DNA from: Utricularia gibba
Lineage: Eukaryota; Plantae; Magnoliophyta
DNA length: 64,000 bases
Assembly: GCA_002189035.1 (NCBI GenBank)
Contig: NEEC01000009.1
Location: 2,356,001-2,420,000 of the forward strand
Direction: 5' to 3'
In this document: in pieces, positions 37,822-53,632 of the stretch
Layout of the letters: every line of letters begins with the position of its first letter
Numbering within the stretch: the stretch's first letter is position 1
Notes under the pieces: model-generated
Database searches by the model: none
What the model was told of the DNA's origin: nothing
Seen by the model: the letters and a program-made list of their open reading frames with translations, nothing else
Position numbers and translations under genes: made by a program

Positions 37822-39191
37822 AGCGGCAAGCAGCACTCTGGTGCTTCTTCTTCCGGTAGACACTGCTTCCTCCGATCTGAGCAGTTTTTCTTTTTCTTTT
37901 TCCCTGCCCACTTTGCACATCTGTAAAGGCTATGCAGCCCTTTCAGTCTGTGAAATGGCGGATCCTCGTGGGGTGAGAGAGATTCATCTCAGAGCAGGTG
38001 ATTTCTGTTGGTGGACTTGTGCTGTATCATGAATGCTTAGATCATTCATTGACTTGCTCATCCGTGCAATCTCAACCACTACGAATTCTCTAATCCGAGG
38101 ATGTGGCTGAAGCCTCAACACAGAAGCATGAGAAGGGAATTTCAAGAATAAAAGAAGCCACAAACAAGGAGCCAATGTGACTGTGGTGCATTTAATCCCG
38201 GTGGGGTCCGAGTTGCTGTTGTGCTTGTCGGATCACATGCTCCTGCCTTAAGCTTAGACCCCCATCAGCCAAACCCACAAAGACAGAGTAGTTCAACTGC
38301 CTGGTAAAACATGAAGAAAAGCATACTGTTTCCGATGCTTATTTGCAGCCGCAGCAGGAAGAGGATGGCCATGACTTTAGTTAACGCACGCTGGTGCTTT
38401 GTGCTCACCGCACCTCCATTACTCTTCTCTCTGTAGGCATACAACCAGTAAAAGAAACGCCTTCAGCTACATTCAGCAGTTCATATTCATCTTCTTTTCT
38501 AGCAACGCATAAGAGAAGGGAGGTAGAGTTCTGCATAGATATTGATCATCTTTATGTTGTGTAGCAACATAGAAAGGAATACACAAAAGAAAGGAGGGTA
38601 GAGTTTAACTGGAGCAGTGTAACCTGGTGCACAAGTGAAAGCGAGGGGACCTCTCTGTGTTGAGTATATTTTGCCAATCTACTATAGCTCTGGCTACTCC
38701 TGGCAGCAGATCCCTCTTTTTTTGCCTGGAAATCCCATCCAATTTTGGAAAATCAGACATGTAACTTTTTCAAAAGTGCAAAGGAGCCAGTTTCAACAAG
38801 CCTTCACCTTTGCTTTCAAACAAAGTCATGTTGCTACTCCTTTATATATTTATTGATCCATGTATTCATAAAAACTTACGCGTAGACAGATAAATACAAG
38901 ATTGGAGCAGGCAGGCTTTGGTGCTGTTGAACCCCAGGGGTAAATGAATGGAGATAGAGCGAAGAGCCACATCCACAGCATGGATTTTTTTCCTGAAAAT
39001 TTATAAAGTGAGGGCCAAGTGTCTGAGGATTTTACTGGGGGCATCGTCATGTGATCCTGCTGCAAAACTATCAACGCCACCCACCACTCTTCTTAAACCT
39101 CTATAAATCTCTTCCAACCATTGAAAAGAACACACCCCACATCCTATAAACAGAGAGCATCTATCGATTTCACGGGTAGTTGGAGAGGAAA

Positions 39192-39530
39192 ATGGACTAT
39201 TACATGGATGAAAAGTGGCAGGCGCGTAGGGAAGATAAGGGAAGTCATTCTAATTGCTCCAGCAATCCCTCTCTCTCAAGGAGCATGTCACAGTGGAGTT
39301 CCTCAACAAGAAATCTCTCAAACAAGAACTCCTCCAGTCTGACAAGGAGTTCTTCACAGAAATGTGTTTCCTCCAAGTCATCATCGCTTGTGAGAAATTC
39401 GTCTCAGAAGTGCACAGATTTCACCCGCAAGTGCAGCAGCTTAGCCAAGGAGCAAAAGGCCAAATTCTACATTGTCAAGAGATGCATTGGGATGCTTGTT
39501 AAGTGGAAGAAGAATGGGGAGGATTCTTGA
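39192..39530 (+). CDS. RTFL: DEVIL/ROTUNDIFOLIA-like (DVL/RTFL) peptide, long Ser-rich form (start 39192 or 39204)
   Basis: MDEKW N-terminus; RTF domain FTRKCSSLAKEQKAKFYIVKRCIGMLVKW; TATA box CTATAAAT at about 39100. Confidence 0.9.
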   Translation: MDYYMDEKWQARREDKGSHSNCSSNPSLSRSMSQWSSSTRNLSNKNSSSLTRSSSQKCVSSKSSSLVRNSSQKCTDFTRKCSSLAKEQKAKFYIVKRCIGMLVKWKKNGEDS

Positions 39531-40680
39531 AGAGCAATTATGAAGATGAAATGAGCCATGAATCTTCCAACTGTAAGATGGATCTTCGCTTCCTGTTGGC
39601 CTGTTGACGTTCTCAGTCATCCCTGAAAAGAAAGCATCTGAAACCACTCAGAGCCTGTGTTTAATTACATTCAAGGCCAGGGTATATTTTAAGATGTGAA
39701 GCAAGGGAATAAAATATTATACAACATTCCATCCCATTCTCTCTATATTTTCCTGCAGCAACAGAGATTTATAAAACACGAAATCATCCATACAAATCTC
39801 ATCAATTTTTTATTTTCCGCTGGCAAAGTCTCTCATACCAAACACAAATGGAAAGAAAGATTCCTCTTCACAATAAAATGAGTATGTTTTTTTTTTATTC
39901 CACGTATATCATCTCCAGAATGCTTTTCAAGATTCAAATTAAAGTACTATACCTATCCGTCTTAAGTCATGGAATCTGTAACCAGGATCTCCAAGTTTGA
40001 CGTGCCTTTATAAGGTCACTACTTCTGCGCAAGTGCTCATTGAGATGCTTCAGAAAGAACGCAACTTCAGTTGTAGCACAGGTTCCAGGGAAGATACAGA
40101 AATACATGGAAGGCTAAGTTTCAGCCTTAAAACTCGCCAGATCTCTGCCATTGCCAGGAGTAGAGCAACTGAAACATTAACTGTTGTGAATTGACCCCAC
40201 GACTATTCCTTGTCTGAAATTCAATTGAACAGATGAAAATTATTCCACCCGGGGAATAAAACATGTTAACACAAAGGGGTAGGACTGTCCCCAATGAAGA
40301 CAATTCAGCCAGCATGACAACATGCGAAGCCAGCTCACAATTTGACAATAATTTAGACAGATGGACAGATGGAAAGATAGATGAAGTCGTAATTTCTCAA
40401 AATGAACGGGAAGTTGAGATCAGTAACATGCTTCAAAAAAAGAAAACGCAACATACCAAAATATTATGGAGTGAAAATAGTTGAAAAGCCTGAGAATTGA
40501 CATTATTTCAACATCCATAGTGGATGGACCTGAACCAGACTTTACCAACCAAGCAAAAAGATGTTGAGCCCCTTCACGTTTCCCATCACTTCACAGAACC
40601 TGAATAGTAAAATCTGTAACCAGCTACATTAGGAACCATGTATAGTGATGCAGTGACGTAGGTCGAGACATTAGGCATAA

Positions 40681-40754
40681 TCCTATTCTCTTGGACTTCT
40701 CAGAATATCATGTGTGCTCCTATTCTCGTGGACTTCTCAAAATATCATGTATGC
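40681..40754. repeat. 37-bp tandem duplication (2 copies, 3 mismatches) inside the PPR pseudogene
   Basis: TCCTATTCTCTTGGACTTCTCAGAATATCATGTGTGC / TCCTATTCTCGTGGACTTCTCAAAATATCATGTATGC. Confidence 0.9.
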
Positions 40755-41160
40755 TCTGTTTGTTTTTCATCGTATTCTCAGAATAGCAACCACGCATAGG
40801 TTTCTCATTTCCAGAAACAAACTTTCAGCATTTATAGCTTCATCCTTGGTAAAGCAAGCTCCAACGAATGTAGCATATCACAACGGCATTGGGTATGAAA
40901 CCCATATTGCGGATTTCGCTCAGTATCTCAAAACCCTCGTCTAGATCCCCGTTCAGGCAGCAACCCTTCATCAAAATCCCAAGACCCAAATGTGTACTCA
41001 GCCAATCGAACTTCATCAAAACGCTAAGCGCGTACTCTGCCAACCGAACAGCTCCCCCTGTTTTTCTCAAAAACCCTCGAAGACCCATCAAAGTTGTTAG
41101 CGAAAACCCTTATAGCAACTACATCATCGAACACGAACCAAGTTTGTTCTTAAGGAGTAA

Positions 41161-41180
41161 ATTGCCCTTTAAAGGGCAAT
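41161..41180. repeat. Perfect 20-bp palindrome
   Basis: ATTGCCCTTT-AAAGGGCAAT. Confidence 0.95.
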
Positions 41181-41673
41181 GAGCGTCTCGTAAACCAGAG
41201 ATTAATTACAATTCTTGACCTCACAAATGAAGGGTAGACACGAGATTGTAAACAACGAAGGCGTAGGTTTACCAGATATCATCTCAAGAATACATTCTGC
41301 TATTGAGGGAGAGCAGGTAGTAAACGATCATGGAACCGCCAACTGGTTAGGTGTAGAGCACTTCCGCAGGATTCAGGAAGAAGATAAACAGGGAAAGCGC
41401 CTTCCGCGGCGGCGATTTGAACATTCAAGGGCTTGATCACTCCGGCCTGGCGTTTTCGCCACACCCATACCTTCAGATTCTCTACAGCTATGAAGTATCC
41501 CCGTGCTGTGTGCGGTGCATGGAGATGAATTTTGTCTTATTGTATACCCATTTGACCAAATTTTACATTACTCGCTATGAAATTAAATATAATTTGTGTA
41601 CATGAAAATATGCCCTAATTAATAAAAGAGAGCGGCTTCGACCCGAACCCGAATCCGGACGCTCCGCTCCATC

Positions 41674-42567
41674 TCACATCCGGTTCCTGCGAAATACCGC
41701 GCCCAAATTCCAGAAAAACCTACGCAGGCGGCCGCCCCTCCTCCGCCGGACCCACTCGAATTCCGTCGATACGCCGCTGCTGAGGTCTAATCGGCCATCT
41801 AACTCCGAGAAAACAGTCGGCATCTCACCGTAGGAAGCTCCCACAAACCTCCCGACTGCAAATCCGCCGCCGGGCAACCTCCATATCGTGAGACCGAAGG
41901 GCTCCGCGGCGTGGTCTGAGTTTTCATTGGAATCGCCGCTCGGCAGCTTGAGGCGACAGATGGGGCACGAATTATGGAGATTCAGCCAGGGGACTATGCA
42001 ATCGGTGTGGTAGATGTGCTTGCAAGGCATTTCACGGGCCTCAGATCCGAGATCGAAGGCCTCCGTACACACCGCGCAGTGCGCGTCCGAGTCCACGTGG
42101 CTCTTCCCAATCTCCACCGTCGGCAACGCCGCAACGGCGTGTTTGCTCGCCGGCGGATTCTCTGAGCGCGTCCACAGACTAATTCCGATCTGCGACAACC
42201 GGTCAAGCATCATCTCAAACCCCGATCCCAGCAAAGTCGCCGACACGGCCGGCGGCACCGGGCGGAGCCCCAAACCATCGGCGTCGTCATAGTAAAGCTC
42301 ATAACTCCTCCCCTCAGCCCCGTCCTCCGATTGCTGCGTAGGGTTCCGAAGGACAACCAGTGGGTTGAAAGAGAACCCTCTCCGACGGCGCCGGTTGAAT
42401 CCAGACCGTAGCGGTTGTGCAGGGGTAGTAGCCATCTGCATAAATCCTCCACGGCAGTGGGGGCAGAGCAGCTCCGACTCCGAGGCGACCGCGGAGACGA
42501 CTCTGGTGCACTGAAAACACCAGTAGGAAGAGGCGGAAGGCGTGGAAGACGGGAGCTGAACCTCCAT
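41674..42567 (-). CDS. RDUF: RING-H2 E3 ubiquitin ligase, RDUF type (zinc ribbon + RING-H2 + DUF1117)
   Basis: YWCFQC..CPHCRGGF, SFNPLVVLR, YELYYDD, NPPASKHAV, CAVCTEAF..EMPCKHIYHTDCIVPWLNLHNSCPICR, GLTIWRLPGGGFAVGRF; intronless. Confidence 0.93.
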   Translation of the reverse strand: MEVQLPSSTPSASSYWCFQCTRVVSAVASESELLCPHCRGGFMQMATTPAQPLRSGFNRRRRRGFSFNPLVVLRNPTQQSEDGAEGRSYELYYDDADGLGLRPVPPAVSATLLGSGFEMMLDRLSQIGISLWTRSENPPASKHAVAALPTVEIGKSHVDSDAHCAVCTEAFDLGSEAREMPCKHIYHTDCIVPWLNLHNSCPICRLKLPSGDSNENSDHAAEPFGLTIWRLPGGGFAVGRFVGASYGEMPTVFSELDGRLDLSSGVSTEFEWVRRRRGGRLRRFFWNLGAVFRRNRM

Positions 42568-44421: not shown

Positions 44422-47400
44422 ATGTTATCTGATTTGGGTAGAAGACCAATGATCGGTAACAATGAAAAATCATTTGGAGATAACTTTGAGATGGGGTTCT
44501 TGCTCGGAGATCAGAGCAGGCAAGAGGCTGATGATCGTGAAAGGGAGTTGAATTTGTACAGGAGCGGATCAGCTCCCCCGACTGTTGAAGGTTCCCTAAG
44601 TGCTATTGGTGGTTTTTTGAAACATGGGGACAGTGGAGTCCTTGTTTCCCAGTTCCCTGAGTTAGCCAAACAGAAGGTTGGCAACGGATTTCTGTCCGAG
44701 GATGATCTTAGGTCTAATCCATCGTATTCTTCTTATTACTACTCAAATGTCAATCTTAACCCAAGGCTGCCTCCTCCTCTGTTGTCAAAAGAGGATTTGA
44801 GGTTTGCACAGAGGCTGCAAGGAGGGAATTCCGTAATTGGGGATAGGAGGAAGGCAAGGACTGAGAGTAGTAGCAACGGGAAAGGAGCCCCTTTTCAAAT
44901 TCCTCCCGGTTTTAATGCTAGAAAGCAAGATGGTGAGGATGACAACAAAATTCTGGGGACTTCGGATTGGGAAAATGATGGACTTGAGTTGCCTGGGTAT
45001 GGTTCGGGTAGCAAGCAAAAGAGGCTTTCTGATACCTTCAATGTCAGTAACTTGTTTCATGCAGTGCATTTCACATTTTCTTATTCCATCTCTATTAATG
45101 AGCATTTACATTCATCAATAATGAAGTTTTATTATGGATTTCATGGGATGCCTTTGTAATTTTTGTCCATTCTTTTGGTATTGCTTATATTAGTGATGAT
45201 TAAATGTCGTTCGCTTATTGGGGGAGGATATTGACGTGAGATGTGATTTATAATGGCTTCATCCATTTTAAGTTGTTTATATCTGTGTAGGAAGGCTTGA
45301 GCGGCTCCAATCACCCAGATGGTGCAATGGGTGACACGTCCGGCGTTTTGGGGTCAGCTGAGGCGGAGTTGGGTTTTCTTCGTAATGATTTTACTCACTC
45401 TGATCCTATCCACTCCTTGTCTCCGATTCACAGCTCATCATCTGGCCATCATGCTAGAGCCCCTGCGTCATATCCTCACGCTAATGCCCTGGGAGCTTCA
45501 TTATCAAGAAGCTCAACTCCTGATCCCCAAAGCATTGCAAGAGTTCCCAGCCCATGCCCGGGAACCATTGGTGGAAGCAGACCAGGTTACTCAGAAAAAA
45601 GAAATGTTAATAGCCCCAGCATTTACAGTGGGGTATCTTCTAAGGGTGATGAACCCGGAGATCTTGTTTCTGCATTGGCATGCATGAACCTTTCAAATGG
45701 AATGGAGGGCGAGGACCATAATTTCTCTTCGAGTTCTAAACCTGATTATCTCTTCAATCTTCATGATGGGAAAAATGATTTCAGACAGCAGGGTTTTGCA
45801 AAAGAGACTGGGCATGCGCATATGATGGCTGCACATTTGAACCAAGAAAGTACGGTTTATCCTGATTCTGGAATTGGTGATGCTGGTTGTTTGGACTTCA
45901 CTGGAAATGTATCTTTACGGGCTGAGATTAAGAAAAGCACCAATGCTTCAAGTAAGCGCTATGGGAAGGGGTCCCCAGGTGCATCCAGTAATGGTGCGGG
46001 CATGTTGCCTTCTCAATATGGGCATCTGGATAGCCCTAATTCATCATTTTCTAGCCGTGGTCTTGCTGGATATGCCAGGAGCCCTATTTCAGGCCAACTT
46101 GGGAGCCCAAATTTGCCACCATTGTTTGAGAATGCTATTGGTGAATCTGCTATGGCACTACAGGGAATGGAAACCAGGATGTCTCGAGGTGCAAACCTTA
46201 ATGCAATGGCTGAACAGAACCTGAACAGAGTTGGAAACCAGCTGGCTGGGGTATTTTGCAGCCACCTTTTGTGGATCCCTTGTACCTTCAATATCTGAGT
46301 GCCGCTGAATATGCGTCGCCGCAGGTTCCTGGTCTTAATTATCCATCTGTTGATATGAATTACATGGGAAATTCATACATGGACGTCTTTCAGAAAGCGC
46401 ATCTTGGGAATTTGTTGCCCCAACAAAGATCTCAATATGCTGCACTGTCAAGTGGAAACTCTACTCAGTCAATCCCTCATGGTTACTTTTCTAGTCCAAC
46501 ATATGGATTATCATATCCTGGTGATCTTCTGGCCAACCATGCTGCTTCAAACTCTTTTGGGTTGCCTACCAACTCTTTGAGGCATGGTGATTATAATATG
46601 CGCTCCCTTGGTGGGACGAGAAACTTCTCTGGGAGCGTTTTCGGTCCTTGGCATTTAAATAATATTGATAATAGGCATGATTCAACGCTGCTCGAGGAAT
46701 TTAAGAGCAATAAGGCGAGATGTTTTGAACTTGCTGAAATTAGTGGTCATGTCGTTGAGTTTAGGTATCACTTTCACAATATTTTACTGAATTCAGTGAG
46801 GGAAAGATTGATGATTTAATCTTTCCATTTTAATGTTATCAAACAGTGTTGATCAATATGGAAGTCGGTTCATTCAACAAAAGCTTGAAACGGCCACCAC
46901 AGATGAGAAAAACATGGTTTTCGAAGAAATCTTCTCTGAAGCTCTTACACTGATGACTGATGTTTTTGGTAATTATGTCATCCAGAAGGTAAGAACCAGT
47001 CTTTCTTTGGTCCAATCAGCGTATGATGATGACTTAATTTTACTATTTTTCTTTCTTAGTATGTTCAGTGTTTCTAAATTGCATTATTTGGTGTCCAGTT
47101 TTTTGAGCATGGATTGGCGAGTCAGAGAAGGGAGTTGGCTAGCAAGCTTTTCGGAAGTATACTGACTCTAAGCCTCCAAATGTATGGTTGTAGGGTGATA
47201 CAAAAGGTAATACTAACCTAAAAAATTCCATCCTGTCTTCTCTTTGGTAGGTGATGGAGGCTGCTTTAGGTTTTCCTTTCGAATATGATGAGCCCATCAG
47301 CACAAACGCCTGGAAACTACGTGTCCTTTTATTTTAGATTGAATCTAATTGTTAATAAGTGATCTGTGTTTCTAACTTTTGTAGGCAATAGAAGTTGTAG

Positions 47401-52612: not shown

Positions 52613-53632
52613 ATGACGGTGATGTTTGTGGCAAGTTACGGATATCGAATTTCTGTTAGGGCATTTGGGATTGGGAAATTAGGATTCCCAAGTTGGTTTT
52701 CGGCTCAGGCCTGTCCAGGGGAAAGCACTGATGCAATTGTGAATAGAATTCTCGCGGCCGGTGAAGAACGCCCTTTTTGTAGGGAGGAAATTTGTTTAGA
52801 TTATATTCGAAAGCTGTGCGCTTCAGGGGATCTTCAATCTGCTGTTAAGGTCCCGCATGCTTTGATTGAGAAGCGGATTTTTCCTGGGTATCGTGCGTAT
52901 GATTATCTTCTGGAAGCCGCTGATAGGGAGAACGATTTTCATCTTCTCTTCCAGGTGTTCAGGGATCTTCATTTTTCATGCAGATCTGTTGGGCTGAATT
53001 CGTATCTCATTGTTGCTAAAGCTTTTGGTAAGCATGATGATTCTAGTATGCTGTTGAGATTTGTCGTTGATGTTTGTCATATGAAACTGATTAGAAGTGT
53101 TGGTGTGATTCTCAATAGGATTATCTATGCCTTAGCTAAATGTGGGTATCCTGACAGAGCTTTGTTGGTGTTTAATTACATGAAAAGTTCAAGAAACAAA
53201 CCAGACTTGGTTTCTTATAACACGGTTCTAGCATTTCTCGGCCGTCTTGGTCGAGTTGATGAAATGCTGTGTGAGTTCGATTGCTTGAAAAAGTCTGGTT
53301 ATCTTCCAGATATTGTGACCTATAATACCATACTGCATAGCTTGAGAAAGATGGGCAGACTAGATTTATGTTTGGTTTATTTCAAGGAGATGACTGAGAG
53401 AGGCATTCAGCTGGATGTAATAACTTTCAAAGCTCTCATTGAAAGTTATGGGAGATCAGGTAACATGGAAGAGGCTTTGAGAGTATTTGATGACATGAGT
53501 GGGAGGGGTATCCATCCTTCAATTCATATCTACAGAGCTCTTGTTTACAGTTTGAAGAAGATGGGAAAGCTAGATTTGGCTTTTCAATTTTTGGCCGAGA
53601 TGAAGAAACTTAAGGTTTGTGTCCATCTGTGA
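52613..53632 (+). CDS. P-type pentatricopeptide repeat protein (At1g11900-like)
   Basis: Tandem PPRs: PDLVSYNTVLAFLGRLGRVDEM, PDIVTYNTILHSLRKMGRLDLC, DVITFKALIESYGRSGNMEEALRVFDDM, PSIHIYRALVYSLKKMG. Confidence 0.92.
   Translation: MTVMFVASYGYRISVRAFGIGKLGFPSWFSAQACPGESTDAIVNRILAAGEERPFCREEICLDYIRKLCASGDLQSAVKVPHALIEKRIFPGYRAYDYLLEAADRENDFHLLFQVFRDLHFSCRSVGLNSYLIVAKAFGKHDDSSMLLRFVVDVCHMKLIRSVGVILNRIIYALAKCGYPDRALLVFNYMKSSRNKPDLVSYNTVLAFLGRLGRVDEMLCEFDCLKKSGYLPDIVTYNTILHSLRKMGRLDLCLVYFKEMTERGIQLDVITFKALIESYGRSGNMEEALRVFDDMSGRGIHPSIHIYRALVYSLKKMGKLDLAFQFLAEMKKLKVCVHL

What the first reader, a model, noticed from the sequence alone, without database searches (positions are those of the whole stretch)
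40480..41470. Dead PPR gene resembling ABO8, a mitochondrial nad4 intron 3 splicing factor: possible nuclear-mitochondrial co-loss
Seen in sequence: N-terminal, central and C-terminal fragments stay colinear but are riddled with stops, indels and duplications, and most PPR repeats are deleted. From memory the fragments match Arabidopsis At4g11690 (for example FGILIKGCC and LAPNVASYR). That gene is ABO8, reported to splice nad4 intron 3 and to affect root meristem activity through ROS. Inference: the gene became dispensable because the mitochondrion lost that intron, or the function moved to another locus. If the host is a rootless Lentibulariaceae species, the root link adds interest. The ORF track shows only one small fragment, so annotation would miss it.
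Basis: partly seen in the sequence, partly recalled or inferred. Interest (0 to 1): 0.7.

Follow-up and report, generated by a model that had tools for sequence, protein, structure and literature searches.

The report
Dead ABO8-type PPR gene relic
A bladderwort-family plant carries the decayed remains of the gene for a mitochondrial RNA-splicing helper (ABO8) at that gene's ancestral position; this is an ordinary pseudogene, and the proposed joint loss of its target intron is not supported.

Summary
On the minus strand of 40480-41470 lie colinear N-terminal, central and C-terminal remains of a P-class PPR gene. They carry at least 9-10 frame changes and 2-5 in-frame stops within the aligned codons, more if the frames are read straight through. 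A 37-bp tandem duplication is present, and about half the gene (roughly eight PPR motifs) is missing.

The ABO8 identification also holds. The relic scores far higher against At4g11690-type proteins, with Lamiales members best, than against about 330 other PPRs or shuffled controls. It sits between the same neighbours as the intact gene in other Lamiales: a RING-DUF1117 gene upstream and a DVL gene downstream.

DNA contigs from two separate studies show no insertions or deletions against the window inside the relic, so it is not an assembly error. RNA coverage is only read-through from the RING gene plus background.

- A congener, Utricularia reniformis, has a four-exon nad4 with about 2.4 kb between exons 3 and 4, so intron 3 is present in the genus.
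- abo8 null mutants are viable, and other factors (PCIS1, maize DEK41) also act on this intron.
- This plant family's genomes have reportedly been duplicated repeatedly, so an intact copy elsewhere is likely.

I could test neither an intact second copy nor this plant's own nad4. The earlier scan notes I retrieved do not mention this finding.

The parts
40480..41470 (-). Whole relic of the ABO8/At4g11690-type P-class PPR gene: about 990 bp left of about 1690 bp
   Evidence: Colinear frameshift-aware alignment to ABO8-group proteins; controls
41386..41424 (-). N-terminal signature MFKSPPRKALSLF (group consensus KxPPLKALSLF); no start codon remains upstream
   Evidence: 10 of 13 residues identical to Coptis P0012
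41175..41312 (-). Pre-PPR region (PSIAECILEMISGK...LVYETLI) with one in-frame stop, in a different frame from the piece before
41054..41149 (-). Remains of the first PPR motifs (EQTWFVFD, FANNFDGSSRVFEKNRG); 15 residues deleted between them
40879..40986 (-). Best-preserved PPR motif (GILMKGCCLNGDLDEGFEILSEIRNMGFIPNAVV); part of the only open stretch, 40840-41109
   Evidence: Pfam PPR E 1e-4; 56-68% identical to Lamiales and Castanea orthologues
40785..40877 (-). Next PPR motif (YATFVGACF...SLFLEMRNL), shifted by one frame
40640..40796 (-). Scraps of PPR motifs that cannot be placed uniquely. They bridge the deletion of about 280 residues and contain in-frame stops.
   Evidence: placement differs between reference proteins
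40681..40756 (.). 37-bp tandem duplication, 2.1 copies, 92% matches, inside the scraps
40480..40639 (-). C-terminal end (MVPNVAGY / TIQVL*SDGKREGAQ...LVKSG...) with an in-frame stop
41674..42567 (-). Intact intronless RING-H2 gene (Zn_ribbon_19 + zf-RING_2 + DUF1117). It is the upstream syntenic anchor and is well expressed.
   Evidence: Pfam; the same gene lies upstream of ABO8 in Fraxinus; RNA contigs
41183..41683 (-). Read-through or long 3' UTR of the RING gene, overlapping the relic's N-terminal third
   Evidence: one 501-nt contig at depth 71, against about 800 over the RING coding region in run X4
39180..39530 (+). DVL/RTFL-family small-peptide gene; the downstream syntenic anchor
   Evidence: Pfam DVL E 3e-9; 75-82% identical match downstream of ABO8 in Handroanthus and Paulownia

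Best explanation
This is the non-functional remnant of the plant's ABO8 (At4g11690-type) gene. ABO8 is a mitochondrial P-class PPR protein that in Arabidopsis helps splice nad4 intron 3. The relic lies at the gene's ancestral position between a RING-DUF1117 gene and a DVL gene. It has lost its start codon, its reading frame and about eight of its PPR motifs, through small indels and one or more large deletions. The same kind of deletion has shrunk the flanking spacers from 5-9 kb in relatives to 0.2-1 kb here. It makes no protein, and the little RNA over it is read-through from the RING gene. Inferred, not shown: it marks the loss of one copy of the gene, most likely a duplicate left over from genome duplication, rather than a joint loss with the mitochondrial intron. 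nad4 intron 3 is still present in the genus. Its splicing is presumably served by a surviving ABO8 copy elsewhere, or by other factors acting on the same intron.
For: Identity: ABO8-group proteins score 181-282 in the frameshift-aware alignment. Ten named other P-class PPRs score 87-135 and shuffles 37-62. The top five of 350 stored PPRs are all Lamiales ABO8-group members. The best single matches by tblastn are also group members. The group is tied to At4g11690 by the RefSeq name of P0166 and by Trp148/149 in Brassicaceae members, matching abo8-1 W149stop. Position: RING-DUF1117 lies upstream on the same strand in Fraxinus, and DVL lies downstream in opposite orientation in Handroanthus and Paulownia, as in the window. 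Dead. Real: two DNA runs from different studies show no insertions or deletions against the window within it. Not expressed as a gene: depth is 0-6 over 40457-41143, against about 800 for the RING gene. No co-loss: U. reniformis nad4 has exons 1-4 with about 2.4 kb between exons 3 and 4. Redundancy is plausible. abo8 nulls are viable. PCIS1 in Arabidopsis and DEK41 in maize also act on nad4 intron 3. Decaying ABO8-type copies also occur in three other Lamiales assemblies.
Against: I could not search the rest of this genome, so a surviving intact copy is assumed, not shown. The protein collection does not hold this genome's proteins. It also missed most canonical ABO8 orthologues, so its silence means nothing. 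This plant's own nad4 was not examined; the intron evidence comes from a congener. The relic lies at the ancestral locus, which is equally what a true single-copy loss would look like. The history of genome duplication in this lineage is from my own knowledge, not from a tool result.
Confidence: 0.6

Rival explanations
1. True genome-wide loss with the intron kept. This relic was the plant's only ABO8 gene, nad4 intron 3 is still in the mitochondrial genome, and it is spliced, perhaps less efficiently, with the help of other factors.
For: The relic lies at the ancestral syntenic locus. abo8 null mutants of Arabidopsis are viable with reduced, not abolished, splicing. PCIS1 and DEK41 also act on this intron. 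No Lentibulariaceae ABO8-type protein appeared in three protein searches, though that blank carries no weight.
Against: ABO8-type genes are kept across eudicots, including a ranunculid. Loss would be expected to cost complex I function. The lineage reportedly underwent several genome duplications (my knowledge), which supply spare copies. Depth doubling and a variant contig over the neighbouring DVL gene hint at a second, similar block elsewhere.
Confidence: 0.2
2. Co-loss. This plant's mitochondrial nad4 has lost intron 3, for example by retroprocessing, which made ABO8 dispensable so that it decayed.
For: Only the logic of the proposal. ABO8 is reported as specific for nad4 intron 3, and the gene is dead here.
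Against: The congener U. reniformis keeps a four-exon nad4 with an intron of about 2.4 kb before exon 4. Its mitochondrial genes are reported as about 94% identical to those of U. gibba, and no such difference is noted. None of the papers I opened reports loss of this intron in Lentibulariaceae; the papers found with the term nad4i1399 were not opened.
Confidence: 0.07
3. Artefact or wrong family. The lesions are sequencing errors in a live gene, or the pieces are chance or other-PPR similarity.
For: Long-read assemblies can carry indel errors. PPR motifs resemble one another.
Against: A short-read-derived contig from a separate study shows no indels against the window within the relic. About half the gene is missing. 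ABO8-group proteins outscore other PPRs two- to three-fold and shuffles five-fold. The non-repeat N-terminal signature and the synteny are family-specific.
Confidence: 0.02

Closest known systems
[quoted passage not shown]
   Same: Same orthologous group by similarity, N-terminal signature and conserved neighbours in Lamiales. Same intronless P-class architecture in the intact relatives.
   Different: Here the gene is dead: no start codon, at least 9 frame changes, several stops, and about eight PPR motifs deleted. No function can be assigned to it.
Intact or nearly intact Lamiales ABO8-type genes (Fraxinus L004:12232-13920; Handroanthus L001; Paulownia L003; Abeliophyllum L002)
   Same: Same position relative to the RING-DUF1117 and DVL genes. 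40-46% amino-acid identity over the aligned codons against Handroanthus and Abeliophyllum, 39% against Fraxinus, and up to 68% in the best motif.
   Different: Fraxinus has an open 563-codon frame. The other three have only one or two lesions. Their spacers to the neighbours are 5-9 kb, against 0.2-1 kb here.
Gene relics left by loss of duplicates after whole-genome duplication, and by deletion-driven genome shrinkage, as described for Utricularia gibba (my knowledge of the 2013 and 2017 genome papers; not read here)
   Same: A recognisable, heavily deleted gene remnant in a very gene-dense region with shrunken spacers.
   Different: I did not show that a duplicate block with an intact copy exists.

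Membership tests
PPR protein family, P class | Tandem 35-residue PPR motifs recognised by the Pfam PPR models | tested here: inconclusive
   The only open piece matches PPR, PPR_2 and PPR_1 at E 1e-4 to 2e-3, all below their gathering scores. The same piece finds 335 PPR proteins at E<=1e-3. At least three motifs are recognisable by alignment.
ABO8 / At4g11690 orthologous group | Closer to ABO8-group proteins than to any other PPR | tested here: met
   Scores are 181-282 against 87-135 for ten named other P-class PPRs. The top five of 350 are Lamiales group members. The highest score I could not assign to the group was about 152. The comparison set is limited to the 350 proteins fetched.
ABO8 / At4g11690 orthologous group | Group-specific non-repeat N-terminus (KxPPLKALSLF ... 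LVYExII) | tested here: met
   MFKSPPRKALSLF at 41424-41386 and SLVYETLI at 41201-41178, in the right order and spacing.
ABO8 / At4g11690 orthologous group | Conserved genomic position | tested here: met
   RING-DUF1117 upstream as in Fraxinus; DVL downstream as in Handroanthus and Paulownia.
ABO8 / At4g11690 orthologous group | The group really is that of Arabidopsis At4g11690 | tested here: inconclusive
   For: the RefSeq name 'At4g11690-like' for Salvia P0166, and Trp148/149 in the A. halleri and Brassica members, matching abo8-1. Against: the A. thaliana protein itself was never retrieved. The paper's primers did not match the two Arabidopsis-genus loci fetched, which I take not to be A. 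thaliana sequence.
ABO8 / At4g11690 orthologous group | Intact reading frame encoding a mitochondrial protein | tested here: not met
   No start codon, at least 9-10 frame changes, 2-5 in-frame stops in the aligned codons, and about 280 residues missing. It is a pseudogene of the family, not a working member.
ABO8 / At4g11690 orthologous group | Promotes splicing of mitochondrial nad4 intron 3 | not testable with these tools
   Needs genetics or RNA analysis, and is moot for a dead gene.

The most novel reading that the evidence does not exclude
This relic was the plant's only ABO8 gene. A rootless carnivorous plant would then have discarded a conserved complex I splicing factor whose loss in Arabidopsis raises mitochondrial ROS. 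It would either splice nad4 intron 3 by other means or have removed the intron. That would tie a specific gene loss to the long-discussed altered respiration and ROS of bladderworts.
Probability: 0.2. Interest if true: 0.55.

Novelty: new member of a known kind. Interest (0 to 1): 0.3.

Why it matters
As it stands, this is a well-documented example of how a compact plant genome erases a gene, with both neighbours still in place, and annotation would miss it. It would matter more only if no intact ABO8 copy exists elsewhere. Then it would be a natural knockout of a conserved mitochondrial splicing factor, and a direct test of how dispensable such factors are when several proteins act on the same intron.

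Tried and rejected
1. The full-library phmmer search with the 89-aa open piece ranked proteins by summed repeat scores and did not single out the orthologue. Re-ranking the hits by single best match did.

2. Three word-index protein searches returned only truncated, fused or lesion-bearing ABO8-type models and no canonical 560-aa orthologues. They cannot show absence in Lentibulariaceae.

3. Exact look-ups of three window-encoded proteins failed. This genome's proteins are therefore not in the collection, and there was no route to a second copy.

4. The primers from the ABO8 paper did not match the Arabidopsis-genus loci L006 and L007 with up to 4 mismatches. I take those loci to be from A. 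arenosa-type genomes, so this says little.

5. Earlier scan notes hold nothing on ABO8, At4g11690 or nad4.

6. Papers on Lamiales mitogenomes gave no intron table for this family.

7. Differences between the relic and Fraxinus by codon position (0.42, 0.33, 0.64) still look coding-like. The alignment was driven by amino-acid similarity, so I draw no age from this.

8. The second PPR gene in the window (52613-53632) is only about 30% identical to anything in my set and is not an ABO8 replacement candidate.

Pieces of the broken gene were sent to the tools separately.

Full report
**What is there**

The window is gene-dense plant nuclear DNA. Earlier notes of this scan call the genome a bladderwort-family plant. 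The assembly size implied by those notes, about 1590 windows of 64 kb, makes Utricularia gibba likely. That is my inference and no tool result names the species.

On the minus strand of 40480-41470, three-frame translation shows PPR-like pieces that keep switching frame and are cut by stops. The longest open stretch (40840-41109, 89 aa) matches the Pfam PPR models only below their gathering scores. It nevertheless finds 335 PPR proteins at E<=1e-3 in the 1.84-billion-protein library.

**Is it more than chance, and which PPR is it?**

I re-ranked the 150 best library hits by their single best match to the region. This put a set of mutually related proteins on top, led by P0017 from Abeliophyllum, a member of the Lamiales. 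A search with P0017 showed these belong to one group that includes a Salvia protein RefSeq names 'At4g11690-like'. The Brassicaceae members of the group carry Trp at 148/149. That is exactly where the abo8-1 allele of At4g11690 has its Trp-to-stop change at nucleotide 447.

I then wrote a frameshift-aware protein-to-DNA alignment.

| Query set | Score |
|---|---|
| Handroanthus P0157 (278 codons, 46% identical, 10 frame changes) | 282 |
| All ABO8-group members tested | 181-282 |
| Ten named other P-class PPRs | 87-135 |
| Median of all 336 stored proteins outside the N-terminal hit list | 99 |
| Shuffled queries | 37-62 |

The five best of 350 stored proteins are all Lamiales ABO8-group members, which is the pattern expected for vertical descent.

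The pieces are colinear:
- the group's non-repeat N-terminal signature, at 41424-41386
- the pre-PPR region, at 41309-41178
- three recognisable PPR motifs, at 41149-40785
- unplaceable scraps containing a 37-bp tandem duplication at 40681-40756
- the C-terminus, at 40639-40480

On the intact 563-codon Fraxinus frame, residues 15-228 and 510-562 survive. About 280 residues, roughly eight motifs, are gone. No start codon remains.

**Position**

- In Fraxinus, a RING gene with Zn_ribbon_19, zf-RING_2 and DUF1117 domains lies 5.4 kb upstream of the ABO8-type gene on the same strand. It matches the window's intact RING gene at 41674-42567 with up to 67% identity.
- In Handroanthus and Paulownia, a DVL-family gene lies 8-9 kb downstream in the opposite orientation. 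It matches the window's DVL gene at 39180-39530 with 75-82% identity.
- The window has the same order and orientations, with spacers of only 0.2 and 0.95 kb.
- A laccase gene that sits between the RING gene and ABO8 in Fraxinus, and just upstream of ABO8 in Handroanthus, is absent here.

The relic is therefore the positional orthologue, in a region that has been heavily deleted.

**Is it real, and is it expressed?**

Contigs of two DNA runs from different studies each span 39629-42070. One is identical to the window across the relic. The other differs by 23 substitutions over the whole contig and has no indel inside the relic. The lesions are therefore not assembly errors, and they predate the split of these accessions.

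In two runs guessed to be RNA, the RING gene is covered at depths of about 800 and 47. One 501-nt contig runs from the RING gene's stop codon down to 41183 at about a tenth of that depth. The rest of the relic is covered at 0-6 or not at all. The relic's first third therefore lies in a read-through or long 3' UTR of the RING gene, and the relic is not expressed as a gene of its own. These are contigs, so strand and exact ends are not shown.

**What it means**

ABO8 is reported as specifically needed for splicing of nad4 intron 3. Null mutants are viable but grow poorly and accumulate ROS.

The only evidence I could reach comes from a congener. The U. reniformis mitogenome paper lists nad4 editing sites in exons 1 to 4, with the last exon 3 site at 579324 and the first exon 4 site at 581798. 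Intron 3 is therefore present in the genus. The same paper reports about 94% identity between the two species' mitochondrial genes and notes no such difference.

Other proteins also act on this intron: PCIS1 in Arabidopsis and DEK41 in maize.

From my own knowledge, this lineage has gone through several genome duplications followed by massive loss of duplicates. A decayed copy at one of the duplicated loci is what that process leaves behind. In line with this, three of the four other Lamiales loci I fetched carry one or two lesions in their ABO8-type frame. That sample is biased, because the search returned only unusual gene models.

**What I could not do**

I could not search the rest of this genome for an intact copy, and I could not read its nad4. 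The choice between loss of a spare copy and loss of the only copy therefore rests on inference. I put about 0.6 on the first, with the intron retained. I put 0.2 on true loss with the intron retained, and 0.07 on co-loss.

**Verdict**

- The co-loss and rootlessness story is not supported.
- This is an ordinary pseudogene of a known gene, well anchored by synteny. It would become interesting only if a whole-genome search shows that no other copy exists.

Noticed in passing
window 39134-39669: Over the DVL gene, the DNA contigs of both runs break into 100-140-nt pieces, summed depth roughly doubles, and one run has a variant contig with four substitutions at 39478-39500. This suggests a second, very similar copy of the DVL region elsewhere in the genome, possibly a duplicated block.
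   Followed up: no
window 40214-40456: One low-depth contig (3.7) of a presumed RNA run skips 243 bases whose ends read GT..AG on the minus strand. That indicates a spliced minus-strand read-through transcript just beyond the relic's 3' end.
   Followed up: no
L001:9935-11689, L002:9947-11690, L003:9941-11658: The ABO8-type genes of Handroanthus (two in-frame stops), Abeliophyllum (one frameshift) and Paulownia (one frameshift, short end) carry lesions in these assemblies. This explains their odd annotated models. I cannot tell whether these are errors, decaying duplicates or the only copies.
   Followed up: partly
window 52613-53632: An intact 339-codon P-class PPR ORF on the plus strand, only about 30% identical to any PPR fetched here. 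It is unrelated to ABO8.
   Followed up: partly
window 44422-46819: Plus-strand ORFs with the NABP domain typical of Pumilio-type RNA-binding proteins, apparently exons of one gene.
   Followed up: no
protein searches: The word-index protein search returned only truncated, fused or otherwise unusual ABO8-type models. It returned none of the canonical full-length orthologues that many plant genomes should hold, so blanks from it for this family are unreliable.
   Followed up: partly
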